Origin: Obrimoposthia wandeli
Taxonomy: Eukaryota
Assembly: GCA_977020255.1 (NCBI GenBank)
Contig: CDROCS010000090.1
Span: 62,001 to 126,000, forward strand
Direction: 5' to 3'
DNA length: 64,000 nt
The notes beneath the pieces are model-generated. The model saw nothing but the letters and a program-made list of their open reading frames with translations. It ran no database searches and was not told the origin of the DNA. Below, one piece after another: positions 10 to 31,800 of the stretch (position 1 is its first letter; the number at the start of each line of letters is the position of its first letter). The position numbers and the translations under genes were made by a program.

Positions 10-400
10 CTTATTTCCAGAACTCGCCGCATATAGTGGGGCTGCAATATTAACATAATCTTTAATAAATTTTCGATAATATTTTGTCATTCCTAAGAAT
101 GACCTTAGTTTTCAGTTAGTTTCGGTATAACCTACTAAATTTTAACTGTTTCTGACTAATGTAGCATTTATTAGGGTTTATTTTGAGGCCTTCAGCTGCA
201 ATTCTTTTGATAATAAATTAATGTTCTCCTTGGTTGTTACTATAAATAAAGATGTCATTCAGATATACAATTGTCCCTTTGAACAGCAAACTAACCAATA
301 TTTTATGCATCAGACTCTGGAATGTTGCAGGTGCTATTGCCTACCCAAATGGCAACTGATTGATTTAAAATTGTCCCAATTTTTTCTGAATGCAGTTTTT
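10..400 (-). mobile_element. Ty3/Gypsy reverse transcriptase/connection pseudogene fragment
   Basis: The minus-strand translation, with stops and frameshifts, reads KTAF...LPFG*AIAPATFQSLMHKIL...IVYLNDIFIYS...GLKINPNKC...LRSFLGMTKYYRKFIKDYVNIAAPLY. These are canonical Gypsy RT motifs. Confidence 0.75.
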
Positions 401-1050
401 GTCTGATACTCATATCTTGGCGTGGTCGCAAGTTATGTTTTCTATTGTATAAAGTTAGATTCCACAGCACAATTTATATTATACAGGTATAGGCAGCTAT
501 ATGTGAACAAATCCTTTCAGTAGGATATATCCAGTTTCTGATTACATAACTGAAATGAAACAACTATATTGTATTTCGTAAAATAAGTTATTGAAGCGCA
601 ATTGTTTATAAAGTTTCTTTATCAGCAAAATATAATTTATTTGATAAAACGTTTTCTTTCTTTTATATAATAATAAAAAACAAGAATCAAATAAAATTTG
701 TATTCAGGCTCCAATCGGTTAATTTTAAATTCATTGTTTAACTAGCCAATAATTAACTGGTAAACTGATGGGAACTCATAATTATTTGATACGCATTTTA
801 TTGAACGTCAATATTTTCTAAAAATGTAAAATATTAAATAAATAATTTGATAAATTTTTTTAAAAAAATTATTATTCAAGCGTAAAGAAAAAGTTATGTA
901 AGGATAATAAAGGCAAGAAGTACACCGTACTTAATAAAACATATATGTTAATATTATCTGGCTCAAGAACAACAAATCCAAAATTCAATTTATTGTAATA
1001 TAAAACAAGTTTGTTATTAAATTCAAATCAATTTGTTGAAATATACAATT

Positions 1051-1187
1051 TTGTTAGACTACTAATTGGGATTATCAAAATTCTGAAATAAATCAATCAA
1101 TTATTTCTTGAAAATATTCAATTTTTGTTGGACTTCTAATTGGGATTATCCAAATTCTGAAATAAATCAATCAATTATTTCTTGAAA
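1051..1187. repeat. Two-copy tandem duplication, ~75-bp unit
   Basis: TTGTT(A/G)GACT(A/T)CTAATTGGGATTATC(A/C)AAATTCTGAAATAAATCAATCAATTATTTCTTGAAA occurs at ~1051 and ~1126. Confidence 0.85.
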
Positions 1188-1249: not shown

Positions 1250-1800
1250 TGTCACATATCATCAGACAGAAAAAGATTCGGCATACATGCACGCACCAAC
1301 ACAGATGCGCACACTTTTGGGAACCGTCACCAGCTGAACACACGATCGGACTGTGCACAGCAAAAAACACAGCCAATCTGGACCCGCATCTAAATTGTAT
1401 GGGTAAAAACATATTACTATGATAAACTATCACACACATACACATATGACGGTGATGATATATTTATGTATGAGAAGAGATGCGTAGTGAGGATGAAAGA
1501 GAAAGAGTGGGTGAGTAAGTGAGTGTGTGAGTGGGTGACTTTATTTGTGTATGTATGTGATTTTGATTTTATTTTTGCATGTGTGTGTGTTTTTACTTCT
1601 TCTTTGCACAAAAACACCATGTTCGTCGGCAAATGATAAAGGAAGAATCTTTCCTTCTTATCTCTGACTTCGCGGGCAATTGCCCACAGCGAAGTCAGAG
1701 ATAAGTCTGCCATCCCCCTGATGAGCCCTACAGGGCGAAACCGGTTAGGCCGGTCGGGGATTGATCAATATATAATAAAAAGCTAAAGTGCATAAAGATT
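1250..1800 (+). mobile_element. Probable 3' remnant (ORF end plus pseudo-LTR) of a Penelope-like retroelement, or a retrozyme-like unit
   Basis: It carries a type I hammerhead ribozyme, which is characteristic of PLE pLTRs and metazoan retrozymes. One upstream frame ends ...HQLNTRSDCAQQKTQPIWTRI*, loosely like the tail after a PLE GIY-YIG domain. This assignment is inference only. Confidence 0.4.
1712..1761 (+). ncRNA. Type I hammerhead ribozyme
   Basis: The layout is ATCCCC-CTGATGA-GCCC(TACA)GGGC-GAA-ACCGG(TTAGG)CCGGT-C-GGGGAT. The CUGAUGA and GAAA core is complete, and stems I (6 bp), II (4 bp) and III (5 bp) all pair. The GUC cleavage triplet predicts a cut after C1755. Confidence 0.92.
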
Positions 1801-1979
1801 TCTACTTCAAAAATTTCCCTAATTAAGGAAATTTCTTAATTAATTAATTTTATATTTTAATATGTTTTATTTTTTCCAAAAACTGCCTCAACATATATAC
1901 AATTTTAATTAGTACATATAAGTAATATATGTAAGTTATACTTAAACAGGGTTAATATATTAAACAATAAAAAAGAAAC

Positions 1980-2803: not shown

Positions 2804-3125
2804 AGTATGTGGATGTGTTCGGTCTAATCCACACCCCTCCCCCTGTCCTTTAAAAGCGTACATGTATGTGGAGTGAAATTTCACTCCACACACATGCACG
2901 GTTTTAAAGGACAGGGGGGAGGGGTCCCGAACTTTATTCGCGCCTGTAGGCGCGAATGGCTTGGGATGCGGGGTCTATATAACAGTTTTCCCGCCCACCA
3001 CGCTCGCATCTTGGGATGACGACTATATCCTAGTTTTTTCGCCCCTACCAGGGCAAACCACCAACGGCCCAACCGCCCAACACCCAACCGCCCAACACCT
3101 AATCGCCCAACACCCACTGCCAACA
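2804..3125 (+). repeat. Left terminal inverted repeat with ~90-bp internal palindrome and C-rich repeats
   Basis: It matches the reverse complement of 8240-8465. It contains a palindrome at 2834-2924 centred on GTGAAA|TTTCAC, a hairpin TTCGCGCC-TGTA-GGCGCGAA at 2937-2956, and CCCAACA/CCCAACCG repeats at ~3066-3130. Confidence 0.85.
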
Positions 3126-7339: not shown

Positions 7340-7839
7340 TTGTTTTTGTATGTTTGAATTTATATATCACAAATTTATTGTACCTAATTTTTATCTTTGG
7401 TTTAATAAATATTTGTATCCAATTCGTCTTTGTCTTTTTCTAAGTATAAAATTTTAATTCTAAAGTATAAAAGTTCTGTGTAAAATTATATTTTTAAACT
7501 ATAAAAATTTTGTAAACAATTTTAATTTCTGTTAAAATTTTTGGAAATTTTAAGAATTTTTTAAAGCCATTTTGAAAATTTTAAATTTGGCGCAAAAAAT
7601 TGCGTCTTATTCAAATAAATAATTTTTTTGTAGTTATTTTCACGCCTGGAGATTGAGAATAAAGCCCGCCCGAAGGGGCGGGCGTTTTCTTGGGGGCTGG
7701 GGTGTGACACGTGTCGTCTACATGTGTAGTTGTCATGGTGAGAGGTAGATGGGTAAAGTGATTGAAACAAGTACTGTAGTTATTTTCGTGAGAATAGAGC
7801 TCGTCTTGAAGGGGCGGGTTGTGGGCGGCGGTGTGTTTG

Positions 7840-8215
7840 ATGAGTGTTGTGTGTGTTGTGTGGGTGTTGTGGGTGTGATGTGGGTGGTGTGGGTGTTGTG
7901 GGTGGTGTGGGTGGTGTGTGTGGTGTGGGTGTTGTGTGGTGGTGTGGGTGGTGTGGGTGGTGTGGGTGGTGTGGTTGGTGTGGGGTGGGGTGGTGTGGGG
8001 TGGTGTGGGGTGGTGTGGGGTGGTGTGGGGTGGTGTGGGGTGGTGTGGGGTGGTGTGGGGTGGTGTGGGGTGGTGTGGGGTGGTGTGGGGTGGTGTGGGG
8101 TGGTGTGGGGTGGTGTGGGGTGGTGTGGGGTGGTGTGGGGTGGTGTGGGGTGGTGTGGGGTGGTGTGGGTGTTGTGTGGGTGGAGTGGGTTGTGTGGGTG
8201 GTGTGGGTTATGGGT
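7840..8215 (+). repeat. G/T-rich tandem array, (TGGTGTGGGG)17 perfect core with 9-mer variant flanks
   Basis: There are 17 perfect 10-mers at 7991-8160, flanked by degenerate GGTGTGGGT units. The three overlapping ORFs listed here are by-products of the repeat. Confidence 0.97.
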
Positions 8216-8239
8216 TTGTGAGAATAGAGCCCACCCGAA

Positions 8240-8465
8240 GGGGCGGGCGGTGGGTGTTGGGCGGTGGGCCGTTGGTGGTTCGCTCCGAGAGGGGGGAAAA
8301 AACTAGGATTTAGTCGTCATCCCAAGGCGCGAGCGTGGTGGGCAGGAAAACTGTGATATAGTCTGCATCCCGAGCCATTGGAGTGAAATTTCACTCCACA
8401 CACATGCACGATTTTAAAGGACAGGTGGGAGGGGGTGTGGATTAGACCAGACCCATCCACCTACT
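8240..8465 (-). repeat. Right terminal inverted repeat of the Polinton-like element
   Basis: Its reverse complement aligns with 2804-3125 except for a missing ~70 bp (the inner palindrome arm plus the small hairpin). Confidence 0.85.
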
Positions 8466-12592: not shown

Positions 12593-13856
12593 ATGAGTGT
12601 AGTAAGTATTGAGTCCAATGATTCCGAATCATATCAGTGTTCCTTGCTGAATGAAAGTATTAGTTCCTTGCAGTTCGATAAAAGAGTTCGATTTCGGAGC
12701 TATAGTTCTCAATTTACACTCAGCGAACTGGTTATGGTTTCCATTGAACGCCGCGAAGAGTGTCAGCCGATCGATAATAAAATAACCATCGAAGTTGACA
12801 TCTGTACTGCTTTAATTGATGATCAAGTATCACAGTGCAGTGAGAAACCTTTTAATGACGTTGTGCGTTTAGAAGATATGACAAAAAGCAATACATGGAT
12901 TGCGAGGCTCATCAATTATGATTCGTTTGTCGACAAAGATCTGCGTCGAACTGTTCGCGAAGATGCAATGGAGCCGAATAAGCTGTACATGGTGAAAAAC
13001 AGACATTCGTCGAGGACTACAGACAATGTTAGTGTAGAGATCAGTAACCCGGTTCCAGGGCAGCGGAAAATGAAAACGTCGGCGGTTCAATTTACACCTC
13101 GTCACAGTTGTACGACAACAGAATGCGAGGAAGAGGTCAGGAGCCACGTTTCACGGGAGTTATCCAATGACAGCATGAGGAATGAACTGCTCATTCAAAC
13201 TGCCTTTGCTGAGAAAAGCAACATAATTTCGTCGATTGATTTGGACAAAACGAAGAACATCGAATTAAGCAACTTTTCCACTGCACCGAAAGCGAAAGAA
13301 CCGGCCACTGAACATGTGACCGATAAACGTGGAAGACAAATTCCCATAATAGCAGTAGAAATGGACACTCAAAATCAAGGTCAACCTAAAATCCAAGAGA
13401 AAAAGTATGTGGAATCGGACACAATTCCGTACGCCGAAGAAACGGATTTGGAGAGTGACAATGCTGCCTCGTATGCCAAGCGGAACACGTTGTCCAAGTC
13501 TTTGCAGTACTATTTGCCTTTGGCAAGCGGAAATGAACAGGCCAACACGAATCAGCTGACGGTGGAAAAGTCAAAAAGAGAATCTGTTACCACTGACGAA
13601 TGCACCTCATTAGACGAGGACGACGATTCTTCTATAACTCCCGAGTTTCACGGAAACGTTAAATCGGAATTTGATTTCCATGAGGACTTTGATGGCTTCA
13701 GTGACAATTTCAACACAATGCAGTCGCAGGAGTCGAATGGAGAAGAATATGAAGAAGATAAAGTTCCAGAAGAAAATAATGACCAAACACCGACTGCATT
13801 TGATGAAGTGGACGCAAAATTTCCTTCAAACAAGTGGGCGACTTTCCAGTTTACAG
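12593..13856 (+). CDS. Large first coding exon (421 codons + 1 nt), acidic/Ser-rich
   Basis: This is the longest ORF in the window (426 aa to the unspliced stop) and has higher GC than its surroundings. It ends at a strong donor, CAG|GTGAGT. No folded domain was recognised. The start codon may not be the true first exon. Confidence 0.88.
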
Positions 13857-16800
13857 GTGAGTGGTTCTTTTGAAATATTTATCCACACCAATCCTCCAAT
13901 TCTAGAAGACATTTCGGGTCGTATTAAGAACTTAAAGGATCCTTAACCAAAAATGTTTTATTAGCTAAGTAGTCCTAAATGTTTTCATGAAGTACGTTTT
14001 ATTTTGACAAATCCATTACCTAATATTAAGAAAATGAAAAAGAACAATTTACAGAAAATAATATTTTGTTTCACATATTTTAAAATTGCAACAAAATTGA
14101 AGTATTATGAAAATTAATATGAAATCAAAATATAAAAAATAAGTCTGAAACCTAATTATTTTAAATATCATTCTTAAAATGCTCATTCGAATTTAATCTG
14201 CATTGACATTGATTTTATCTTATATTAAATTAATTCAATCGAAAACATAATTATTTAAAAGAGAATTAACTTTATGTTTTTAAAATACTTTTAAATCTTC
14301 TAGTAAATATTTTAATTTTATTAGAACCAACATTAGAACCGACCAAATTCAAATTGTATAATGGAAAAGATAATTATTCGATCATGAAGTAGATTACATT
14401 AACAAAATTTAATTTATGATAATTGATGTAATTTTTGTGTATTCAACTGTGATAATTTTTTTCCGGGTTTTGTGATTACATTTTGTAATTTATTACTACG
14501 ATGTTGCAGATTTTGATTATATTGAAATTTTCAAAAGTTACTTTTTCAATTAATGAAACTTATCTAATTTTCGAATTAAATATTATCATTATAACGATTA
14601 ATAAACCAATTGAAAGAAATTTCAACTTAATATCAACTATCACCAAAACAATATTTTCTTAAATTATATAAATAAATTACATAATGAACTTTATTGTTTC
14701 GATAATTTTTTCCTTAAAATATATATTTTTTAGGTAATTTATTTAAATAAGATGGTTAAAATTCCCTTTTTTATTCATAGAAGTTTTCTCGACAGTGGAT
14801 TTATTAAAGGAATGTTTACAGGCTCGAGTAATCAGCGTCCAATTGTACTTACACACCTACACATGAGGTCCAAATTAGAGACACGTGGCCGGAAAAGTAA
14901 ACCAAAACAATATACACAGAGCTCCATTAACGTATTTTCCACACTCATAATGATCCACTTAAAGGTGATTATTGAAAATAGTCGGAGTGTTTTCTAAAGT
15001 TGAAACGATGCGTGTTTTGATCTCAATTCACCGAGGGTCCAAATAGAGGATTAAATATCGGGATTTATTCTTCTTCAAACACTCAATCAATCCAGGTTAC
15101 ATGGTTCAGAGAACTGTTTCGAAAAATATTCGATAATTGCAGAGTTGACTAGATTGCAGTGGTCACAAAAATATATATAATTTTAGAAAAAGTGTTAACA
15201 AGTACATAATACGATTTAAAAGATAACTTTTTTCCGTTAACGAAATAGCATATTATTAGTCTAACTGTGTTATTCAAATAATGTTATTTAAATTAATCCA
15301 TCTTTTCACGTTTTGAAATATCGACATGGGAAAAGCCCAGTTTTATAGACAAAATAAGGATTGGATATATGTGCAACTGTATATTTAGTTATAATAATTA
15401 ATTATTAGGTACATTCTCTTACGCAAACATGAGATGTCGGTATTGTTTTCTCATAGATTACATTCTTTTGAACTAGAGCCAAGTATTTCAGCTTGCCGTT
15501 TAGAAAGATACAAATATCTTACTAATTCATTTATCTGACCCGACTTATTAATAAAGATTCTCGAGACATTAGTATTTCATAATTTGTATACGTAATATCG
15601 TTTTTGTATATTAATGTCTTCCTATCTACTTCCGATATAAATTTTTTTTACAAATTATAAATAATTTAATAAAATAATGATACAAAATTAAAAAAAAAAC
15701 TTTTTAGGCATAAAATCATAAATTATTGTTGTACATGATGTACAAATTATTATTGTCCGAAATGCAAAATTTTCCCTACAAAACTTATTTTCATCACAGG
15801 TAAAATTTCGATCTTGCACTGTATTATTTTAGGAAAGATAAACAATTAAAATATAAAATGAACGTCTATATTTCTTCCGAATTCTACAATATTAGAACAT
15901 TCTCTTGTCAATAATGGCAGGCTGCTGTTAGTTTGTACGCATATACGTCAAACATACGATATTCCAGTCTTTTGATATCTTCCTGAAAATAATTGAATAA
16001 TAATTGAACATTTATCGAAAGCCAGTGCATCTCAAGCCTATACCTTTTCAGCCCCGTTTGTCTTGTAAATAATTGAAAGATAAGCCTTTGCCGTATATTA
16101 AATTTCCTGTCACTCCAACCATCCAATACAAACATATAATAACTGCTCTTAATTTTCATAGACCTATGTCTGTCTTTAGATTATTATTTAATATAAGTTT
16201 TAATCTTTGTAAGTAGTGATGCAATGAAAGTAAATTTTGTGAAAATGATTCAAAATTGAATCTAAGAAAAACATAAACCTTATTAAAGAAACGATAAGTA
16301 AAAAAAGAACATTTGTCCTTGATGAAAATATTACAATAAACTGTCAAATTATTAAAGATTTATGTAACAAGAAAATACCTTACTACTGAGTTAACTACAA
16401 TGCTGACACATTCAATTATTACATCAAGATTGGATTTTCAAAATTAATTATTGTTTAATATTTCAGCTTTTATTTTAAATCACTTACTAAAACATTTAAA
16501 CAAATCCGTTAGAATTTTATTCAAATTATGGATAAGTTCGTAGACGTGAAAATTTAATGAAGCTCTGTTGACTGTCGATCAATGCCAGAATTGAAATTAA
16601 GATTTTTCTCATTATCAAAAAGGTATTATCTCACAAAGGCTCCAATATTTATATGATCTTCTCTAGTATGGAATATTTGAAATTTATGATCTGAATATAA
16701 ATAAAAATTTAGCGATAGATATAAAAAACAGTAACAATGCGGAAAAAATTAAGAAGCAGTTGAATACATTTTGAACATATTAAGAGAAAAAATGAAAACA

Positions 16801-19800: not shown

Positions 19801-22800
19801 ACTTGTCATTAGACAGTAGACGAGGAACCTTAAGACAGATCTGGTTCAGCTTCAAGAAGATATTTGTGTTTCTTTGTTTTGATGCCAACCAGTCCAGGGA
19901 AATGGGGAAGGTAGAATATACCTAGGACTAATAGTCAACTAAAATGACGCCAATGTCATTTGCTCAAGAACCATCTTTCGGACGCCATCTGATGCAAGCT
20001 CCAAGAGCTGCTGTTCTTCTAAATCACAGTTCCATCCGACTCAGGGAAGTGCTTGTGAAAGTCATTTTGCAAATCTTCCAAATTCAACGCCATATATTGT
20101 AGTATATCACCACTGCTTTCTTCTGTTGACTGTCACTTGAAGTTGTGAAGGTTTGCGTAAGAGTCTAATTTTCCTGGATCAGGGTGTTTACCTGACAGAG
20201 GCAATTTTGTGATAATTTATTTTGCTTGAACATGAAATATTGAGATTCAGGTTTCATTCAGATGCTTCTCGATTTAAGAATTTCTATCCTGTACCCTGTA
20301 AACTTTCAACATACCACATGGATCAATGTAAATAAATATATTTGATCAGAAAAATGTCTTAAAATACCAAAAAAGAATTCGATTCACAACTCTCTTTCTT
20401 CATTTTTCTTCTTCTACAGTTAATTCTACAAAATTCGTCGAAAAGTTTTTTTTCATATTTTTACTTACTTCGATGCTAGTTTCTCTGAAATAGAACTGAA
20501 GAAACTGCATACTTTAAGAATTAAGACTATTCAAATTTCGTTCAACTCTATTTATTTCTTATGAAATGTTTTGAGCATGAGGTTTCTGAAAAATATTTGA
20601 TTGTAGGTATCAGTATTCTTGAATAAATGGATAAATGCAGTAGAATTAGGATATATGGATACATATTAGATGACATATTTGGAGTAGATTGGTAAATTGT
20701 AAATTTAGTGTTCACGTTTTGTGGTTTTTTCAAACATAACTGACTGAGTGAGCTAGTATTCTTGTTTAATTACATTGTGTTTTCCTTACAACAGTGAGAC
20801 TCAATAAGCTAGCAAGTAGATACATATGTCACTGATTTCGTTAAGACAAAGAAATTAAAGCTCGCATCGTTATTTTCTAACTCATCACATTTCAAACGAC
20901 TACTTCCTAACTAGAAAGATCTTGTATTTTTCTTAGTGAATTGATTTCTAAATTGTCGCGGTTAGCACTTTTTTATGCTAAATCATAAGTATATAAACTT
21001 TTATACAATATCGATAATTTTCAAATGTATATTTGAATTATAACGACATCCCTAACTCATATAATAACTGGATAAATTAACATTTTTCAAGATTTAACGT
21101 AACGTATAAATAATAACGCAAAACAACTATTATAAATATGCAAAATTTTTAAATATATTATAATATTTAAACATGACATAGATTATTTTTAACTATTTAT
21201 TTCTACATTTAGATATAATAAATTTCAGTTTTTATGTATGAAACTCGTTACATCCAAAATGTTTAGTTTCTATTTAAATATAATAATGATAACCCTCTGT
21301 ATAATTTAGAGAAAATAAAAATATTGAATAGAAATTTAGTAAAATAATTCGCAAAACTCAGAATTAAATTTCAACAGAACTAAATGTGATTGGGATAAAG
21401 CTTTATTTGGAATTCATTGAAGTGAAACTAATAACAAGTTTTATTCAACTAAATTTGAAAAGTGCTAATATCTAGAAGACTAGATATTAAAACAAAGTTC
21501 ATCACATTCTCCGTCACTAAGATTTGACTGGTCTACGTAATCGATGAATTTGGTTGGAGCTTATCGTTGACTTGATGATGTTCGTACGTCGTTGGTTTCA
21601 TTCGTGGATTCAGTCTCATCTTGAGAATCGTTAAGAGGAATGTTGCTGGGAACCTCTATGGATTCAGTTTGGTTTTTCTTTTGAAAGAGGAGCAAGATCT
21701 TGAGTTGACACCGTGTCTATTTTTCCGTTTTGGTTTTTTATTTTGGCATACTGTTGATTAGCCTCAATAAGATCGACCTCTTGTACCGAGGGCTCATATT
21801 TATTGTCTTTTACGTGTCTTCTTAGAAGTACGGTTCCTGGTTTGTTTAGCCATTTGGGCAGGCTTCTTCCGAATGCTGATTGTCTTTCGTGATTTAAAAG
21901 TCTTTCACGTGGAGTGCAATTTGTGGAGGTGCACAGTAACGATCGAATAGAATGTAGCGCTTCTTGCAAAACCACTTTCCATGAAGATGGGGTTTGGTTT
22001 CATCTGTGTAGAGTTAAAGATATAGTTTTCCAGAGTGTCCCATTTAGTCGCTCTACTTGACCATTTCCTGATGGATGATATGGTGTTGTTTGGGTTTAGG
22101 TTTGGTTGTGCTTCGTTAAGAATTCCCTGACTTCTTGACTCATACATTGGGTACCTCGATCGGTGTGAATTGACGAAGGACACCCGAACGTGGAGAAGAG
22201 ATCGAGGAGGCACGTTTTTACTGTGTGTGCTTCTATGTTTTTGCAAGGGTAGTCAAACGGGAATCTGGAATATTCGTCTATCATCACTAGAAGGTATCGG
22301 TAAGGGCCGGATTGCGGTAGCGGTCCTTTGAAGTCTATACTCAATATTTCAAAGGGTCGAGTCATTTTATTAGCTGTGACATCTCGGGTCGGTAGTATTG
22401 TGGTTTGAGTATTGCGCATGTTTTGCAATTTTCACAAACGTATCTGACTTTCTTTATAGAGAATGGGAGGTTTTTGCTTCTGATGAAATGCCAGAGCCTT
22501 GTAATTCCTGGGTGGCCCAACGTTTGATGGATTTCAAGAGCCGTTTTGGATTTGACATTTGGACATTGCGTCTGCAGCTAGATTGAGTTTGTCTGGAATG
22601 TGTGTTACGTTGTAGAAATATAAGGACAACTCAAATCTCCATCGAATAATTTTGTCATTTTTAGTTTTTCCATTTCTCTTTTAATTGAAGATAAACGAGA
22701 GCACCTTTTGGTCAGTTTTGATTGAAAAGTGGTTTGTGATCAATATTGATCCCCATTTTCGCACACTTTCGACGATCGCCATAACTTCTTTCTCGATTGA

Positions 22801-25800
22801 AGATAATCTTTCTTCGTTCAAGTTCAGGGTTCTGGAGAAGAATGCAATATGTTTATCTTCTTGCACCATGACTCCTGAAAAGGCGGTTTTTGAAGCGTCC
22901 TTTTGAATTTCATTCGGGATATTGAGTTTGATTGGAGATAGTGTGGATGATAAGATTTCCTTTTTCAATTGAGAGAGTGCTGTTTTTGCTGACAGGGGCA
23001 GAGAAAATGTTGCTTCAGAAGAGGTTGGATTTTGTCGGAAAATGATGGTATCCATTTGGCATAATAGCTCAGGAGTCCACGTAGTCTCTGCAATTCCTTT
23101 GCATTGGTTGGTAATGGGTAATCAGTAATAGGTTTTAACCTTTCTGGACCAGGGCGCATTGAATTCTCTTCGATTTGATATCCAAGAAAATTTATGGGCG
23201 TTTTTCGAAGCAAGCATTTATCCATGTTGAGCGAGATTTGGACTTTTTTAACCACTTCAAGGAATTTATTGACGTTTTTGTCATGATCTTCTAGTGATGG
23301 CCCGACGATGATTATGTCACCTAGATAACTGTAGGTGCCTTTGAGATTGTTATCGTCGATAATGTTGTTCATAGTCCGTTGGAAAGCGCTGACGGCATTA
23401 GTAACTCTAAATGGTAGTTTTCTGAACTGATATAAGTTACCGGAGGCTTGGAAAGCCGTGAATATTTTGTCGTATGGGTGCAGAGGTACCTGGTGGTAGG
23501 CTGGTCGCAGGTCCAGTTAGCTAAAGTATTTGTTTTTTGATATTTCTCATCCGAGATTTTGATATTTCCAATGTTTATACTCGGTCTCGGATTTACCTTC
23601 CAGTTTTGGAAAAGTAAAGAGTTTCTCCATCGATGAGTAAAATTTAGTTGAATAAATTGAAGGGAAACTAATAACAAGTTTTATTTAACTAAATTTGAAA
23701 AGTGCTAATATCTAGAAGACTAGATATTTAAACAAAGTTCATCACATTCATCAATAGTATTTCTAAAACTGCCTCCTGTATCCAGTTGTCGTGAGAAGAA
23801 ACAGCAAGCCGCAATCATTGGGACGATCCAGATCTAGAGATCTAAGTCCTGAACAGTTTTGGCGAAATGAACAAGGTATGTACTGGTTTTAGAATTGCAT
23901 TTAGAAAGATGAACATAGTACATCATGCATGATTAAGATAAAATAAATACGAATATGCAGAGTAGCTTTCGAGAAATAGCTCGATATAAAATCTTAATTC
24001 AAACTTTATTTATATTTCTTTCATTCAAAAATAAACAAAAATGTGGAAAAGATATAATATACATTTATAAAGCATCAGAATTTAAATATCATGCAGCATA
24101 CAAAATATCTTTGAAACTTAAACGGGAACTCTTCATAATGCTTATTTTATAAGAAAATCTTCAACATTATTTTAAAAGTATTTATATTCCTAAAATTTCT
24201 TATACAGAGCAATTCCGCTAACCTTACCGATTTAAGAAAGAATTAAAACTTCCAGATACAACATTTATTTAAATGTAGTAAACTTTATATAGGGATGGAA
24301 AAGTTATTTTGCTCTTTAAGCGTTTTGAGTTTTTGAATAAAAATTCTAACAAATTTTCTTAATTATATAAATATACAATAAAAAGTTCATTTTCATTTAA
24401 AAATAAAGAAACTAATAAGAAAAAATATCTTGAAATCTTGTATGAAAATAAACAAACTATAAACCATATTTATTTAAAATCGAAAAGTTTGATAACATTC
24501 CTTTTATTCGTATTTCTTTGCTTAACTGTTTTCTTCTAAATTTTTAATTTGATTTTTTTCCATCAACATTTATGTAATCTGATTTTAATTTACAGAAAGT
24601 CTTCATGATATTAATGTATAAAGATCTTGGTAGCCATTCTAATACACCATCATTATTTTCATTAAATCATGGACAGAGCTGTAATCTTGTACAAGGACAA
24701 TAATTCATGAAATGTAATTTTACTAGTTTCCGTGCATATGTACTGAGTATATCTCTCTGCCCGTGTCGTTCGTATTTACTGCTACCATAAGTCCATGGCA
24801 TAACCATACTCCTGAGCATTAATCTTCAACCACCACAATCACAAAATTTTTTAATTTAAAACTTCGTAGAGCTCCATCTTTTCCTAATAATATAATACAT
24901 CATACAAATACCAATTATCGGGACCGCCCAATTTAAACTTTTTTTCATTCGTATAGGTAACTTTAGACCAGTCCAAATTATTCTCCATCCGAAGTCTTAT
25001 TAACCTTATTCTTCTTACCTCTCATATGCACTCAACAAAATTCCCCGTAGATACTTTCCATACCTCATGTCATTTAGGAAAATTTTATTCAATGTTCTTC
25101 AAGTTTAAGGATTCTACGATTGATCTGCATGTGACTTAAAATCCTTCTAAATTATCTTTCTTTATAAATCGGACAATCCGACTGTTCACCCTTTTTTCTC
25201 TATAGTGTTTCGTTCCTGTTTTCATTTTAATTTGTTTACACACATGCGCATAAATATTTTGCTGTTATTTTAGAAATTTGCAATATTTGACTTTTTTCAG
25301 TATAAGTTTTGCCTTCATCGCGTTGAAATCTAAACAGCGTCAAAATATTATCTTATCTAAAAATAATCATAATTTAATTATTAGCTAAAAAATCTATTTT
25401 AAAATTTAACATTATTTAAAAATTAGAAATAAAGTTATGACAACAAATTAAAACTGATTGGTATTTTAAAATGTAGCCAAATAAAATTAAAATTACATAA
25501 AAGTTTTAAAAAATTCATCACTTTACATGATTTATTATGTATTATAACTAATAAAAGATTCTGAACATGACCATCATTATTCTCCACATAAAGTTGACGT
25601 CGCTTGTAAAAGCTTTGACCATAATTATCTTGTTCATGTCGTCTTTTTTTTAAATCCTCTAATCGTCGTTTTTCTTTTTCACAATTAGTAGATATATAAT
25701 TAGATGCCTTTTTTAAATTTATAAATCTGAGATAATTCATATTGCATTTGTAATTCAGACAAATCTTATGCGGTTTATTTATAAATATCCATAAATATCC

Positions 25801-28800
25801 ACATGCATAAACATAGTATATCTGAGATATTAAAATAGTCATTAATTATGGCTAAAAAATTAAGAACAAAAAGATAGTTTCGATTTATAAATGTTCCCAT
25901 GTTTAAATTGTAAATAGCGATCTTATTTTTTTCAAGATGCTTAAATTTTGACATAAATTTGAATAAACGGTGTTCTTAATTTGTTCCATTAAAAAACGTC
26001 GGGCAATGTCTTAAGCGGGGACTTTGCAGTTATTGAATAAACCATGATTACCAATTCATCTCTTGGGAAGATGTTTCTTTTTCAACCATTGGGGACATCC
26101 TCTTGCATCATTAGTCGATCCCCTGGGTCAGATATTTCTTGAAGATGAAGACTAAAATATGTCTCCAACATAAATGTTAATATTATTATTAAACAAATTT
26201 CAATTACTGACTATTGTAAATGCATAATCTCCGTTTATTATTATTAGTTTGGTTATATGAAGAAATCACAAAGCGCGATTGTTCAAAGGTAGAATGTACG
26301 ACCTGTGAGACTGGTGGCTTCGAAAGTCAAAATAAAACTGGGAAATTCTCGAAATAATTTATTTCCAATTGTACAAATAGTTGACATATATATATATGTG
26401 CAGTCGATTCAGATCACGAAAGAAGTACTTTGGTGCACTGTGTTCCAGAGCCCTTATTAATGTACACGGACGTCGAGAAACCGGACTTCCGTGTGCCACA
26501 GAAAGGTGGGATATGACTTTGTGTGGAGAACTGCCAGACAACATCTGGATTGGTGACCATTTAATTATTAACAAAGTGAAATCCAAACTAGAGTTATATA
26601 TTATTCTGAAGTGTGAAACTTCAGCATTTAACATGGTCAATAATGAGATGTTTGATCTCTGACTGCCAGATGACAATTACCTCATTTTACTCATGGAATA
26701 CAAAACAATACATTTATAATCATTATTACTTATTTAATAATAATTTTAATCGATTCTGTGATTTACACTTTCTAAATCTTTCCTTTTAAATTAAATTTTC
26801 TTCATTTACAAAATCCATCGAATTCGCTTCAGAATGTAACATAAATGACTCTTTTTTTCCAGCTGAACCAAAAGTCGAGTCTGGTACGGAAGACACCAGT
26901 TTGTCTTCCTCAGAAGCCGAGGAAGAAGTAAAAGAAGGTAATTATTTTCCAAATAAAATAACATAATATTTTAAAAGAATATTGGTCAAGATTCAGCTAC
27001 TTGTACCTTACTCTGGGGCATTAAATTAATTCTTTAAATTGAATGCGTTGATATTTCTGAAGGTTGATACTTGATAACAATTCACTGTACGATCTCGATT
27101 TGTTTGTTTTTGAATCGCTTAGTAACGTAGCATTAAAACAATATGATGATGTATGAATTTTACTAATTCGATCTATTTAAATCTCTACTTATGTGTTTGG
27201 GGAGCTAATAATTTAACATTGCACTGACTCCATGTGACACGATGAATTGTATTAAAGAAATATTATGAAAATTCATTTATTTTTGTTGGAGAGCTGGATT
27301 TAACGATATTGTTGCGTCTTGTCAGGAGAAGACTCTGTTAACACTGGATCCAGCAGTTTCAAATGGGAAATGTTGATGAAAGCGACAAAAGGCGCATTGG
27401 TAATCCATCACCAGAAGTTGAAGAAGAAATCAAATTGCTTTCGAGCACGAGCTGTCACATAGCAAGTCGGAATTAGCAAATGAGATGGATGAAAAATCTG
27501 CGCAAAGCTTATATAAAAACATCTTAAATGCTAATCATTAAATAAAGAGAATAGCCTTCACAAAAGAACATCAAAAAGTAAGAAAAATTGCACCAAAGAT
27601 TGGTTCAAACGCTTCTTGAATTTTAAATCAATTATTAATTCAGCTGAGGCTCAATTTTCATTAGTTGCACCTGATTATTCTCTTTCGTGGGAGCTAGACA
27701 ATGAAGGTAAATGTAGTTTTAGAATTAGTCGAGCATTTTATGGCGGTTCAGATTTGGTACGTGGATTCGCTATCTCTAATAGAAAGTTTCATGTTGAAAT
27801 AATTGATAGTACATTTAGACATTGTCATTTATTTAGAAATAATATGCTGCCCAATTTTACAGTCAGTAAATGTCAGATTTATGCAAGATAATGCAAGACG
27901 ATATACTCGCTTAAAAGCTAAAAAGATGTTTATCAAAGAAAATATTCGAGTTTTGAAGCGGCCTTCACATAACTCAGATTTATATATTATAGAGAATATG
28001 TGAAAGATTTTTAAGGTTTCTATATATATTTGTGTGTCATTTAAATATAATATTACTTTTCATTCCTTTATTCACAATATAATTCTTTAAAATTGTACTT
28101 TTTTGAAATTTCCAATTGTTTATCTAACTTATAAAATATGAAAATATAAATGTAATGAATTAACGCAATCACTTTAATATTAATCTGGATATGTTCTAAA
28201 CAACGGTTAAAATTTTAAAAAATCTTGAAAAATTCAAACATATTCCTTTTTTTATTCATTTATTCTTTATGCATGTTATCGTTCTAAAATAACTACATCT
28301 ACTACAACTTAATCCAAGTCCTGGTGTATAGGAGCTTCTATAAATATATTATTTTGACAATATCTAGGAAATTCTCTTTTATTAAATTATAAGGTCGTAT
28401 CAAACATTTCCCCAAATTTGACTGAAATCTCATAGGACTTTGATTGAATTTAATTTTTTTGTTTTAACTTTTCAATAATTTAAGAAGGATATTTCAAAAT
28501 TTTGTTAATAATTATAAAAAAATTATATTATTTTATTATTTTCAAAAATTCCGCAAAAGAAGGAAAATAGAAGAGGAGTATCGGAATAATGTTAAACACA
28601 GTATTGGTAATTCAAATGATTGTATTAGCGGAAAAGGTTGATTAAAAATACTTTAATGTAAATTGTTTTAATCTTTACAAATTATTAGAATAATAAAGTT
28701 TTTGATTCATGGTATAATCCTATTTTAGATGTATACTTTGTCCATCTTAGTGAGTATTAACAAATATCATATTCATTTCCAATTTTATGCTGATGACCCA

Positions 28801-31800
28801 CAACTTTATGTTGTTTTGATTCTAATGACTTTATAATCATATTTTCTAAAATGTAAAATCTTATTAATGAGATATCTATATCAAGACAATTGAACTTAAA
28901 TGAAAATAAAACGGTGGCTAGATTTTTTATATCGAAGAATTATAAATTCTTAATTTTTTTTCCAATTTGTTATGACTTCCACTAAACTATAATTTTTTAA
29001 TATGTAAATAAATAACTTTTTTCAAACTGCTAATGAATTTACTTATTAGATATATTTTATCAATGCAATAAATATTATTGGCTCAATAAGACCCAAGAAA
29101 TTTTTCAATAAGGGTTAAAATGACTCGAAGGTGTCACGAATAATTTTTTTTCAAGGAACCGAGGAAGGTTGATACTCAACTTATCATTTAAAATTTTAAA
29201 CATAGCCGTGGGTATTTTATTCAAATTAAAGAAAAGGGCTTGTACAGGTGAACATTTAATGAATCTCCATTGGCTATCGATCGATGCCAGAATGGAATTC
29301 AAGATTCTATTTTATTTTCAAAAAATGTATTCTCTCTTCTTCAGTCTGGTGCAGTGAGCATGTATATGCATCTTAGGAGCAACTATGATAACTGCAGATT
29401 GCTTAAGAAATTCTCAAATAACAAACAGAGTGGGGGCATATTTAACTGATGAATATAAGGAACTGTAACAATGTTGAAAAACTCAAGGAGCAGCTGAAGA
29501 CTCTGATAGTAATAAATCATAGATGCGTCGGATTAAATATATTATTGCAATTGTTATTTAATTTATGTAAATCATAACATTGATAAAAACGTCCCTATTA
29601 AGATCACAACAACAAAAACAATGTTGTGAATTAATTGGCGTTGAGAGAGTAGAAATCTTGAAATGCTTGAGTAAATCTAATTTACTTTTTTACATATAAA
29701 CTGTGCAGCTAAATCTATCAACTTTCATTTATAATTTATATTTGGGAAGAAATTGCCATTATATATCCGGATGTGGATTTCTATCATAAAATGTGTCCGA
29801 AGACTCCAAAGCCAAATTACGGAAAATATCATTGCAAATGTATAGACAGCTTGCACCATACAATTTTCATTTACATTAGTCATCCACAATCAGAGAAAAT
29901 AAGCAAACCTAACAAACTAAAGACAAAAACCGCAATGCAACATTTCCCGTACTGATTTTGGTGCTAAAAAGTAGATAAGAATTGATAAAAAAAATGTTCA
30001 ACAAGAATTGTGAAATAAAGCTGTTTAAACAATTTATTTGACTCCTATTCGTTCAGAGAGCAAACCTGAACAGAAAACTTGGACCAATGTTTATCTCATG
30101 AAAACTGGTACGTTATACAAGTGCTTTTGTAATAAATTTCAATTTGACTTCTTTACGTATTTTTATAAAATTAATTGTAACTTAAAAAATAAATCTTCTT
30201 CAAAGAAATTTTTTTTTCAATTTTTCTTTTATAGTTTTCGTTGACCCTTGTGCATGGGGTAAAAGTATGAATATTATAATACAATGCAAACGGACCTACA
30301 TAAATTAATTTATAATAATAAAATAAAATTTAAGTTGATGCCAATTTGATTTTGAATTTTTACCTTATTTATGATTCTAAAATCTATTTTTACAGTTTAA
30401 CCAACTTTTTTTTGTCTTACAAGTTAATATATGATTTAGAAAATCTAAATAATTATCAATTATAAAATTCCAAATCGTGTATTATAAATGCATTAAGTAG
30501 TTATATAAACAAATGTAAAGATTACAACAAGTGTTCAATGTTTAATGAATACACAAAATTAAATCTATATGATTTTTTAAAAAACTTTTTGTAGAAAGAG
30601 CTCATATTCGTTTTTCTTTGTTGTACTAATTATTCAATATTATTCAAAAATTATTTACAATGTTTACTACTTTATAGAATTTGATTTCTATTCATATAAT
30701 TAAATTACTCTTCAATTAAATTCTCAAAACGGATCTTAAAAACAATGTATCATATTCTCACTCAATTCCTTCTATTCATTCCAGATCTTGTCAAATCTCC
30801 CATTCATCCCGATCATGCACATTCCTTCCAGAAGTTTTTTGTGAATCGATCAAACTCTGAGCAAGAGAAACTCCAAGGTAACATAACTCTGCATTTAGTA
30901 ATGAATCTTTATTATATTATTAGAAGAAAATTTTAAAAATATATAAGAGCGAGATCATTGTTTGTGGAACGATACCGAGTGATATTTTATATTTTAATTT
31001 AGGTCACTATATATACTTTATCCCACCTAAGGCCTAATATAATTTAAAAAGTACCTAGAATATTTGTAGAAACTGTTGAAGCATAATATCGGGTAGGGTT
31101 TATTTAGTATAAGTAATTAAATTAAAAATATGTATGTTTATTATTTTACTTTATTTTTTTCAATTTTTATTTTTAATTTATTTATAGAACATTCTACTTA
31201 TTTTAATAAGTAAACGACTTTCTAAATATATTTCAGAATTTTTATTGTTAATTAGTTGAATAAAATAGAATTATAAAGATCATTTTCATATTAGCGTAGC
31301 TCTTTGTAGTTCTATATAAAAATAAGGATAACTTATGAAAATATGGACAGTTTTTCAAGTGTTCCAGTTCTTTATTTCATCAGATGGATTTCATTTCTTC
31401 TTTAAATTAACTAAATTATTAAGGTATGTTTCAAAAATATTTTAATTCAAAACTTACTTTCCATCAGAAAATAATGCATATCTAGCCGGTTTCATGTTAA
31501 AAGACTTTGGGGGACTTCATCGGGATACAAGTTTTTTTACGTTTTCAGAGCAAATGAGACTGTATAAATTGAATTTCTCAAAACAAATCAGAATCACAAA
31601 ATTGTCTATTGCAGTAACAAATACAAAATTTGGTGCAAAGAATAAAGTATTGAAAGTTTTGGTGACTTTTTGTCGATGGAAATGTATCAAGTATTAACCC
31701 TCAGCCTGCCAACGTTTGACATAACCTATTCAAGCCAACGTGTGATTTTAAGAATCACACCTTAATTTATGTATTTTTCATTGTTTTAGTCAGTTAAATT

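What the first reader, a model, noticed from the sequence alone, without database searches (positions are those of the whole stretch)
1712..1761. Intact type I hammerhead ribozyme in a sea of decayed DNA
Every conserved core nucleotide (C3 U4 G5 A6 U7 G8 A9, G12 A13 A14, A15.1-U16.1, C17) and all three stems are perfect, while the neighbouring elements are full of stops. Stem III is built from CCGG palindromes, which would allow the dimeric folding described for minimal metazoan hammerheads. Type I hammerheads mark Penelope pLTRs and retrozymes (established knowledge). Its integrity suggests a recent insertion or retained function, for example processing a local transcript before the AATAAA at ~1774.
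Basis: partly seen in the sequence, partly recalled or inferred. Interest (0 to 1): 0.8.

Follow-up and report, generated by a model that had tools for sequence, protein, structure and literature searches.

The report
Hammerhead ribozyme inside a high-copy repeat
A genuine self-cutting hammerhead RNA motif is there, but it is one solitary, slightly worn copy of a short mobile repeat present thousands of times in this animal's genome, which is common in invertebrates and not a locally special gene.

Summary
Window 1712-1761 (+) is a complete type I hammerhead: Rfam RF00163 scores 34.1 bits (gathering 34), E 1e-4 for the whole window. A descriptor of my own hits once in the window and never in 300 simulated windows. 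The three-helix fold is the minimum-energy structure in 66- to 521-nt contexts.

It is not a lone survivor. Contigs of four runs from one sample reach about 2,000-4,000 times the unique-flank depth over it, with over 100 distinct variant contigs. It is the core of a unit of about 240-275 bp (about 1622-1860): a 5' arm, a hairpin (17 bp here, 19 bp in the family majority), the hammerhead, a variable A-rich linker and an AT-rich palindromic block. Listed family variation inside the hammerhead falls only on N7, loops II and III, or keeps a wobble pair.

This copy differs from the majority at five or more sites, stands alone in 64 kb, and its AATAAA is not conserved.

Best reading (0.5): a solo unit of a ribozyme-bearing non-autonomous retroelement (retrozyme/SINE-like). 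Rival (0.3): a short LTR carrying the ribozyme antisense, as earlier notes of this scan report for other pieces filed under the same genome. The left boundary reads CA|TGG on the minus strand, towards a reverse-transcriptase relic. No RNA data exist. It is a known kind.

The parts
1622..1655 (+). 5' arm of the repeat unit, less conserved than the core
   Evidence: Several contigs begin to match at 1622/1623. Depth is about 350-480 times the unique flank. Loose ends before 1655 are diverged homologues of the window's own 1626-1655.
1657..1705 (+). Long hairpin directly upstream of the ribozyme: 17 perfect bp here, 19 bp in the family majority (C at 1688 restores G1674-C1688 next to G1675-C1687), with an 11-nt loop
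   Evidence: Sequence; self-BLAST inverted match, E 4e-12; kept in all folds; depth about 1,300-1,600 times unique, and 1688 A>C in most copies.
1712..1761 (+). Type I hammerhead ribozyme. Helix I is 1712-1717 with 1756-1761, core 1718-1724, helix II 1725-1736, G12-A14 1737-1739, helix III 1740-1754, C17 1755. The predicted scissile bond is 1755|1756.
   Evidence: Rfam RF00163, 34.1 bits; descriptor against simulations; folds; depth about 2,100-4,100 times unique.
1762..1764 (+). UGA just beyond helix I. Many copies stop resembling the window here.
   Evidence: 41 contigs of X1 (24, 9 and 5 in X2-X4) carry loose ends behind 1764.
1765..1812 (+). Variable A-rich linker. It contains the non-conserved AATAAA at 1774.
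   Evidence: Depth dips to about 660 times unique. Many joints run from 17xx to about 1813. Loose ends behind 1764 are A-rich with low agreement. Variants at 1768, 1771, 1777, 1781, 1784, 1802 and 1803.
1813..1860 (+). Conserved AT-rich block B: palindrome AAATTTCC(1811-1818)...GGAAATTT(1827-1834), followed by TTAA repeats
   Evidence: Depth is about 3,100-4,700 times unique. At least ten contigs join block A to this block. Contigs span 1666-1849, 1700-1849 and 1733-1860. Its low complexity may inflate the depth.
1609..1615 (+). CAAAAAC, repeated at 1877-1883: a weak candidate for a target-site duplication under the sense-retroposon reading
   Evidence: Longest flank match found. An A-run 7-mer in AT-rich DNA could be chance.
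1617..1621 (-). CA|TGG on the minus strand at the left edge of the high-copy unit: the junction expected for an LTR end followed by a primer-binding site under the rival reading
   Evidence: Sequence; boundary at 1622/1623. Beyond TGG the stretch is too A/U-rich for a nuclear tRNA acceptor end (inference).
119..340 (-). Decayed LTR-retrotransposon-type reverse transcriptase relic (context, not shown to belong to the unit)
   Evidence: Two collinear weak RVT_1 matches, profile 125-166 then 174-200; frames with stops.

Best explanation
The hammerhead is the conserved catalytic core of a very abundant, short, non-coding mobile repeat of about 240-275 bp. The unit consists of a 5' arm, a 17-19-bp hairpin, the ribozyme, an A-rich linker and an AT-rich palindromic block. 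The window holds one solitary, moderately diverged copy, most probably in sense orientation. The family behaves like the ribozyme-bearing non-autonomous retroelements of animals (non-LTR retrozymes, or SINE-like repeats such as those of schistosomes). In those, the + strand RNA folds into the three-helix junction and cuts itself after C17 (here C1755), leaving a 2',3'-cyclic phosphate and a 5'-OH. This trims longer transcripts to unit RNAs that can be ligated into circles and copied back into DNA by a reverse transcriptase supplied in trans, probably from a Penelope-like element. Shown here: the motif, its fold, its membership of a high-copy family, and a variation pattern that spares the core. 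Inferred: cleavage, circle formation, the mobilising enzyme and the orientation of retroposition. At this locus the copy most likely does nothing beyond cutting any RNA that happens to read through it.
For: Motif and fold. High copy number: the summed contig depth is 234,000-237,000 at 1697-1778 against 57 on the unique flank 1902-2024 in X1, and 13,100-13,500 against 6.09 in X2. More than 100 distinct contigs carry single variants, and 1,568 contigs of X1 were laid on 1.2 kb. Unit limits: depth steps from about 8 times to about 480 times unique at about 1615 and back to about 13 times after 1860. Contigs start at 1622/1623 and many join block A to block B. Constraint: the listed family variants inside the hammerhead are 1712 A>G (keeps a G-U pair with U1761), 1722 T>C (position 7, the free core position), 1729 and 1730 (loop II) and 1748 (loop III). 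Five hits all falling among roughly 13 tolerant positions of 50 has a chance of about 6e-4 (my calculation). Loose ends behind 1704/1705 show diverged subfamilies that still read CTGAAGAG. Copies are dispersed, not tandem: flanks before 1655 are heterogeneous, no head-to-tail joint is listed, and there is one copy in 64 kb. Loose ends behind 1764 are A-rich. Literature: thousands of type I hammerheads in short repeats of invertebrates, about 5,000 in a mussel (PMC7229834). Dispersed as well as tandem copies occur, and animal retrozymes are proposed to derive from Penelope pLTRs (bioRxiv 10.64898/2026.07.22.740005). [quoted passage not shown]
Against: There are no RNA data at all, because no RNA run holds the stretch, so cleavage and transcription are untested. 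No tandem arrangement, which defines retrozymes, is seen here. There is no tRNA-like head or pol III boxes and no convincing target duplication. The kind of the four runs is not recorded and summed contig depth is not a copy number. 39 variant rows were not shown, so the variation argument is incomplete. The left boundary reads CA|TGG on the minus strand, with a reverse-transcriptase relic on that strand further on, which suits the LTR rival. At least one paralogous contig runs from the low-copy left region (about 6 times unique) straight into the unit (X2 joint 1563->1636), so this unit is part of a larger duplicated piece.
Confidence: 0.5

Rival explanations
1. The unit is a short LTR (about 260-275 bp, minus strand, about 1878/1893 down to 1620) of a gypsy-type retrotransposon whose genes run leftwards off the window. 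The hammerhead then lies on the strand opposite the element's genes and could cut only antisense or read-in transcripts, near the point opposite the LTR's own transcription start.
For: On the minus strand the high-copy unit ends ...CGAACA and is followed at once by TGG, within 2 nt of the 1622/1623 boundary seen. TGTT...AACA termini are possible at 1893 and 1620. A TATA-like run lies about 25-30 nt upstream of the ribozyme's complement. A reverse-transcriptase relic of LTR-element type lies downstream on the same minus strand. The about 6-times-unique region 1000-1614 between them would be the element's leader, and it holds 74-bp tandem repeats. Earlier notes of this scan on other pieces filed under the same genome report the motif antisense in both LTRs of gypsy-type elements. 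Those notes are leads only; I tested the idea here only through the boundary and the strand of the relic.
Against: Beyond TGG the putative primer site (TGGTGTTTTTGTGC) would need a tRNA ending ...CAAAAACACCA, which is implausible for a nuclear tRNA (inference). Only about 1.2 kb separates the unit from the truncated RT, with no gag or protease signal. Depth falls to about 13 times unique after 1860, so the proposed TG start at 1878/1893 is not shared by other copies. No second copy can be seen, because the element would run off the window. There is no poly(A) signal downstream of the TATA-like run on that strand. Conservation of an antisense ribozyme across diverged families would need a function for antisense RNA, which is not described in the literature searched.
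Confidence: 0.3
2. It is the 3' terminal piece (pLTR part) of a heavily 5'-truncated Penelope-like element.
For: Penelope-like elements carry hammerheads in their pLTRs and show strong 5' truncation (PMC4209133, PMC8557442). Depth rises stepwise towards the ribozyme: about 480, then about 1,600, then about 4,100 times unique.
Against: The 5' edge is abrupt (about 8 to about 480 times unique at 1615), not a gradual truncation ramp. No RT or GIY-YIG coding relic lies upstream on the + strand. The ribozyme has canonical helix sizes with a long helix III, not the minimal form with a long helix II and almost no helix III described for metazoan elements (PMC4209133).
Confidence: 0.1
3. It is an exapted, locus-specific ribozyme that processes a host transcript ahead of the AATAAA at 1774.
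For: The motif is intact and AATAAA lies 19 nt downstream of the cut.
Against: It is one of thousands of copies. AATAAA occurs once per 385 nt here and is not conserved in the family. There is no gene or long ORF nearby and no RNA run.
Confidence: 0.03
4. It is a chance match to the hammerhead consensus.
For: The score is only just at the Rfam gathering threshold, and the folding z-score is -0.59.
Against: E 1e-4 for the window. No descriptor hits in 300 simulated windows. It has high-copy family membership, with variation confined to tolerant positions.
Confidence: 0.01

Closest known systems
Metazoan non-LTR retrozymes (Cervera and de la Pena 2020, PMC7229834; Li et al. 2026 preprint, 10.64898/2026.07.22.740005)
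   Same: Both are type I hammerheads with a 6-bp helix I and a 4-bp helix II inside a short (150-450 bp), low-G+C, non-coding repeat present in thousands of copies in an invertebrate genome. As in the mussel family, the classical loop 1-loop 2 contact nucleotides are not recognisable.
   Different: This copy is solitary, and no head-to-tail joints were seen among the contigs, whereas retrozymes are defined by tandem units. Helix III is longer (5-6 bp against 1-2 bp). A conserved 19-bp hairpin abuts the ribozyme. circRNA is untested.
Sm-alpha / Sj-alpha SINE-like repeats of schistosomes (Ferbeyre et al. 1998, as cited in PMC4209133; the rest from my own knowledge)
   Same: Both are dispersed short repeats carrying a sense type I hammerhead, in thousands of copies. 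The Rfam consensus, which resembles the schistosome form, aligns over its full length.
   Different: Different loop II. An 11-nt insertion gives a stable helix III here, against 2 bp plus a tetraloop in the consensus. There is no tRNA-like pol III head.
Minimal hammerheads in Penelope-like element pLTRs (PMC4209133; PMC8557442)
   Same: Both are type I hammerheads linked to a retroelement terminal repeat and mostly found as single dispersed motifs.
   Different: Those have a 7-8-bp helix II, a 4-5-bp helix I, almost no helix III, and need dimers. This one has canonical helix sizes and a monomer-stable helix III. No Penelope ORF lies nearby.
Plant LTR retrozymes (PMC4918200)
   Same: Both place a hammerhead inside a terminal repeat of an LTR-type element linked to gypsy machinery, if the LTR rival is right.
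   Different: The plant ribozymes are type III and lie in sense, and the elements have a clear tRNA-Met primer site, a polypurine tract and 4-bp target duplications. Here the ribozyme is type I and would be antisense, and no convincing primer site was found.

Membership tests
Hammerhead ribozyme, type I (Rfam RF00163) | Conserved core: C3 U4 G5 A6 N7 G8 A9, G12 A13 A14, A15.1-U16.1, H17 | tested here: met
   All present at 1718-1724, 1737-1740, 1754 and 1755.
Hammerhead ribozyme, type I (Rfam RF00163) | Three helices around the core, with helix I open (5' and 3' ends in helix I) | tested here: met
   Helices I, II and III have 6, 4 and 5-6 bp. They form the minimum-energy structure in five contexts.
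Hammerhead ribozyme, type I (Rfam RF00163) | Covariance-model score at or above the curated gathering score | tested here: met
   34.1 against 34.0 bits, which is marginal. It was found only with the laxer filters.
Hammerhead ribozyme, type I (Rfam RF00163) | Self-cleavage after position 17 | not testable with these tools
   Needs in vitro transcription, or RNA ends mapped at 1755|1756. No RNA run is available.
Metazoan non-LTR retrozyme | Short non-coding repeat unit (about 150-450 bp, low G+C) holding a type I hammerhead, in many copies | tested here: met
   The unit spans about 1622-1860 with G+C 0.38. Depth is about 2,000-4,000 times unique and there are over 100 variant contigs.
Metazoan non-LTR retrozyme | Head-to-tail tandem arrangement (dimers to multimers) | tested here: not met
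   There is one copy in 64 kb. No unit-end to unit-start joint is among the listed joints, though that list is truncated.
Metazoan non-LTR retrozyme | Expression as unit-length linear and circular RNA | not testable with these tools
   No RNA runs hold the stretch.
Penelope-like element pLTR | Flanks an ORF with telomerase-like RT and GIY-YIG endonuclease, in sense | tested here: not met
   No such relic lies upstream on the + strand within the 1.7 kb available. The window edge limits the test.
Penelope-like element pLTR | Minimal hammerhead (long helix II, vestigial helix III) | tested here: not met
   Helix II has 4 bp and helix III has 5-6 bp.
LTR of a gypsy-type retrotransposon (ribozyme antisense) | Two direct copies flanking gag-pol, with TG...CA ends and a target duplication | tested here: inconclusive
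   The second copy would lie off the window. TGTT...AACA ends are possible at 1893 and 1620, but depth does not support 1861-1893 as part of the family.
LTR of a gypsy-type retrotransposon (ribozyme antisense) | Primer-binding site complementary to a tRNA 3' end next to the LTR | tested here: inconclusive
   CA|TGG sits at the boundary, but the next 11 nt are too A/U-rich. The window holds no tRNA gene for comparison.
SINE | Internal pol III promoter or a tRNA/5S/7SL-derived head | tested here: not met
   ARAGORN finds nothing, and I saw no A or B box by eye.
SINE | Target-site duplication and a 3' A-rich or simple-repeat tail | tested here: inconclusive
   A 7-bp CAAAAAC occurs at 1609 and 1877, and the 3' end is AT-rich. 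Both are weak evidence in 30% G+C DNA.

The most novel reading that the evidence does not exclude
The hairpin-plus-hammerhead module is an integral, selectively kept part of the LTRs of gypsy-type (possibly envelope-bearing) retroelements. It sits on the strand opposite their genes, so these elements would carry a ribozyme that cuts antisense or read-in RNA opposite their own transcription start, for instance to limit double-stranded RNA. This would be a ribozyme-retroelement pairing not found in the literature I searched. The locus offers only indirect support: CA|TGG at the unit edge and an RT relic on the minus strand.
Probability: 0.25. Interest if true: 0.6.

Novelty: new member of a known kind. 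Interest (0 to 1): 0.3.

Why it matters
Type I hammerheads in abundant short repeats are a recognised feature of invertebrate genomes, so this copy by itself changes little. Two points have some value. First, the family joins a monomer-stable hammerhead (long helix III) to a conserved 19-bp hairpin. This layout gives a clean substrate for testing whether such units cleave as monomers and whether the hairpin helps folding, serves as a reverse-transcriptase handle, or feeds small-RNA pathways. Second, several notes of this scan place the same kind of motif antisense in gypsy-type LTRs. If a genome-wide census confirms that, it would be a new arrangement worth study. This locus cannot settle it, because the element would run off the window.

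Tried and rejected
- **Rfam gathering scan of the whole window** found nothing. The match appears only with laxer filters.
- **RAGATH-1 hammerhead**, which also has an upstream hairpin, scored 20 bits against a gathering score of 56 and was rejected.
- **miRNA-family hits on the hairpin** were far below threshold.
- **Other copies in the window:** none by exact or 3-mismatch pattern, by hammerhead pattern, by repeat finder or by sensitive BLAST.
- **Relatives in public collections.**
  - A core pattern hit 120+ metagenome and 37 viral contigs, but BLAST showed matches to the core only, with no hairpin or flanks.
  - A helix III pattern found nothing in the genome or viral collections.
  - A hairpin pattern found nothing in the genome collection.
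  - One 17-mer viral hit was chance.
- **Other copies through spurious ORFs across the unit:** no protein relatives.
- **Reaching the DNA left of the window** by exact-protein look-up of four window ORFs: none was on record.
- **Identifying the organism** through the 426-aa ORF gave no Pfam family, no homologue and only weak Atlas leads.
- **RNA evidence:** no RNA run holds the stretch.
- **tRNA-like head:** none.
- **Bacterial-type promoter and terminator scan:** nothing, and not relevant to a eukaryote.
- **An LTR spanning 1250-1767** (G+C-richer, TGTCAC...GATCA) was considered and rejected. Depth shows no step at 1250, a contig at about 6 times unique depth spans 1143-1316, and no TGG follows on the minus strand.
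- **Literature search for the exact ribozyme sequence:** no relevant paper.

Full report
**The motif.** Window 1712-1761 (+) reads AUCCCC CUGAUGA GCCC-UACA-GGGC GAA A-CCGG-UUAGG-CCGG-U C GGGGAU. Helix I has 6 bp, helix II has 4 bp with a tetraloop, and helix III has 5 bp, or 6 with a U-G pair. The predicted scissile bond lies between C1755 and G1756.

Rfam's Hammerhead_1 model matches end to end at 34.1 bits, against a gathering score of 34. The E-value is 8e-7 on 501 nt and 1e-4 on the whole window. The default gathering scan missed it, which I take to be an effect of its speed filters.

A descriptor I wrote (core plus minimum helix lengths) hits once in the window and never in 300 simulated windows of the same dinucleotide make-up. 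The hammerhead junction is the minimum-energy fold of the 66-nt stretch. It survives intact when 121, 161, 261 or 521 nt are folded. Folding energy alone is unremarkable (z -0.59).

**Not a lone survivor.** The window has no second copy of the motif or of its surroundings. I then laid the contigs of four runs of one sample on 1000-2200.
- The unique flank 1902-2024 has depth 57 in X1 and 6.09 in X2, and a 358-nt contig matches 1834-2191 without a difference.
- The ribozyme bins (1697-1778) reach 234,000-237,000 in X1 and 13,100-13,500 in X2. That is about 4,100 and 2,200 times the unique depth.
- The hairpin bin reaches about 1,300-1,600 times, 1615-1655 about 350-480 times, 1779-1819 about 660-940 times, and 1820-1860 about 3,100-4,700 times.
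- Depth is only about 8 times unique at 1574-1614 and about 13 times at 1861-1901.

Summed contig depth is not a copy number, and the kind of the runs is not on record. However, single variant letters are carried by more than 100 distinct contigs each, and 1,568 contigs of X1 were laid on 1.2 kb. The multi-copy conclusion therefore does not rest on depth alone. The perfect, evenly covered AT-rich flank argues that these are DNA runs (inference).

**Anatomy of the unit.** Several contigs begin to match at 1622/1623. Loose ends before 1655 turn out to be diverged homologues of the window's own 1626-1655. Many contigs stop resembling the window behind 1764 and continue with A-rich, poorly agreeing sequence. 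At least ten contigs join the ribozyme block to about 1813 with unaligned letters between, and others run through to 1849-1860.

The unit is therefore about 240 bp, and up to about 275 bp if the AT-rich end is counted. It has these parts:
- a 5' arm (1622-1655);
- a hairpin (1657-1705);
- a 6-nt spacer;
- the hammerhead (1712-1761) plus UGA;
- a variable A-rich linker (1765-1812);
- an AT-rich block with the palindrome AAATTTCC...GGAAATTT and TTAA repeats (1813-1860).

The hairpin has 17 perfect pairs here. Most family members have C at 1688, which adds G1674-C1688 next to G1675-C1687 and gives 19 pairs. G+C is 0.64 in the ribozyme, 0.51 in the hairpin, 0.38 over the unit and 0.30 in the window.

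**Signs of constraint.** Within the 50 nt of the ribozyme, the listed family variants are five:
- 1712 A>G, which keeps a G-U pair with U1761;
- 1722 T>C, at about half of the depth, at position 7, the one free core position;
- 1729 and 1730, in loop II;
- 1748, in loop III.

Five hits all falling among roughly 13 tolerant positions of 50 has a chance of about 6e-4, or 3e-3 if 1729 and 1730 count as one event (my calculation). Loose ends behind 1704/1705 show more distant subfamilies that still read CTGAAGAG, so position 7 is seen as U, C and A.

There are two caveats. First, 39 variant rows were not shown. Second, a few subfamily-founding changes weigh heavily. Even so, the pattern is what selection on the + strand RNA would leave.

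**This copy.** It differs from the family majority at 1652, 1688, 1729, 1730 and 1748, with 1722 split about evenly. Its linker is diverged with indels against the loose-end consensus. It is an ordinary, not especially young member.

The AATAAA at 1774 is one of 166 on the + strand of the window, and the family varies at 1777. The idea of a ribozyme feeding a poly(A) site has no support.

A dimer through the near-palindromic helix III is favourable on paper (-51.2 against -45.0 kcal/mol). The monomer already has a stable helix III. That differs from the dimer-dependent amphibian, schistosome and Penelope variants, whose helix III has 1-2 bp or none (PMC4209133, PMC7229834).

**What kind of element.** Two readings remain.

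(a) *A sense-oriented, non-autonomous retroposon of the retrozyme/SINE-like kind.* This fits the literature:
- Thousands of type I hammerheads sit in short, low-G+C repeats of invertebrates, about 5,000 in a mussel, and some families lack the classical loop-loop contacts (PMC7229834).
- Dispersed as well as tandem copies occur, and a derivation from Penelope pLTRs has been proposed (10.64898/2026.07.22.740005).
- Such repeats have been likened to SINEs (PMC7761336).

It also fits the conservation of the + strand ribozyme, the A-rich sequence after the ribozyme and the heterogeneous flanks.

Against it, there is no tandem partner, no pol III head, and only a weak 7-bp candidate duplication (CAAAAAC at 1609 and 1877).

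(b) *A short LTR on the minus strand, with the ribozyme antisense.* Points in favour:
- On that strand the unit ends ...CGAACA and is followed at once by TGG, within 2 nt of the contig-defined boundary.
- A TATA-like run precedes the ribozyme's complement.
- A decayed RT relic of LTR-element type lies downstream on the same strand at about 119-340, with two collinear weak RVT_1 matches.
- Earlier notes of this scan on other pieces filed under the same genome report the motif antisense in LTRs of gypsy-type elements, while others found only a short dispersed repeat. I treat those as leads. Here I could test only the boundary and the strand of the relic.

Points against:
- The stretch after TGG would need a tRNA ending CAAAAACACCA.
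- Only about 1.2 kb with no gag or protease signal separates the unit from the truncated RT.
- Depth does not support a shared TG start at 1878 or 1893.
- The second LTR would lie off the window.
- No paper I found describes an antisense hammerhead in animal LTRs.

The region 1000-1614 is a repeat at about 6 times unique depth, and at least one paralogue continues from it into the unit (X2 joint 1563->1636). Either reading can accommodate that.

I put (a) at 0.5, (b) at 0.3, a 5'-truncated Penelope 3' end at 0.1, a locus-specific function at 0.03 and chance at 0.01.

**What could not be done.**
- No RNA run holds the stretch.
- No relatives were found in the metagenome, viral or prokaryote-genome collections beyond matches to the ribozyme core.
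- Protein-based routes to other copies, or to the DNA left of the window, failed.
- The organism could not be identified, so I cannot say whether this particular family has already been described.

**Verdict.** This is a real hammerhead, correctly read by the first stage, but it is a routine member of an abundant ribozyme-bearing repeat family. It is a known kind of element in a somewhat unusual form: a long helix III, an adjacent conserved hairpin and dispersed copies. This scan has already noted the same kind of motif many times on other DNA filed under this genome. Interest is low to moderate. The open question is whether the family is an LTR with an antisense ribozyme, and that needs a genome-wide census, not this locus.

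Noticed in passing
window 2834-2956, and 2975-3071 with 8265-8361: A large palindrome (sub-threshold mir-188-like hits on both strands) sits next to 97-nt inverted repeats, 89% complementary and 5.2 kb apart. They enclose a G-rich (GGGTGGTGT)n-like array at 7797-8237. It looks like a foldback or TIR-type element; an earlier first-reader note (s1-232400) flags the same palindrome.
   Followed up: no
window 44164-44755: Two adjacent 296-nt copies are 100% identical. This is either a very recent tandem duplication or an assembly artefact.
   Followed up: no
window 28700-29502 and 44701-45428: Several collinear segments 76-88% identical lie about 16 kb apart. These are two diverged copies of one repeat family. 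Shorter relatives lie at 16530-16621 and 47881-47943.
   Followed up: partly
window 21402-21509 and 23643-23749; 22681-23372 (-): 108-nt direct repeats, 93.5% identical and 2.2 kb apart, flank ORF fragments on the minus strand with an RVT_1 match. This could be a truncated retroelement. It carries no hammerhead.
   Followed up: partly
window 1049-1187: Two 65-nt copies, 95% identical, spaced 74 nt start to start, lie inside the low-copy (about 6 times unique) region left of the ribozyme unit.
   Followed up: no
window 12593-13873 (+): An intact 426-aa ORF with no Pfam family, no homologue in the large protein collection and only weak Atlas leads. It may be spurious or lineage-specific.
   Followed up: partly
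L005, L025, L051, L061, L081 (metagenome contigs): Contigs carry two or three hammerhead-core matches on one strand at spacings of about 550-1,450 nt. These may be tandem ribozyme-bearing repeats or viroid-like sequences. They are unrelated to the window's family beyond the core.
   Followed up: no
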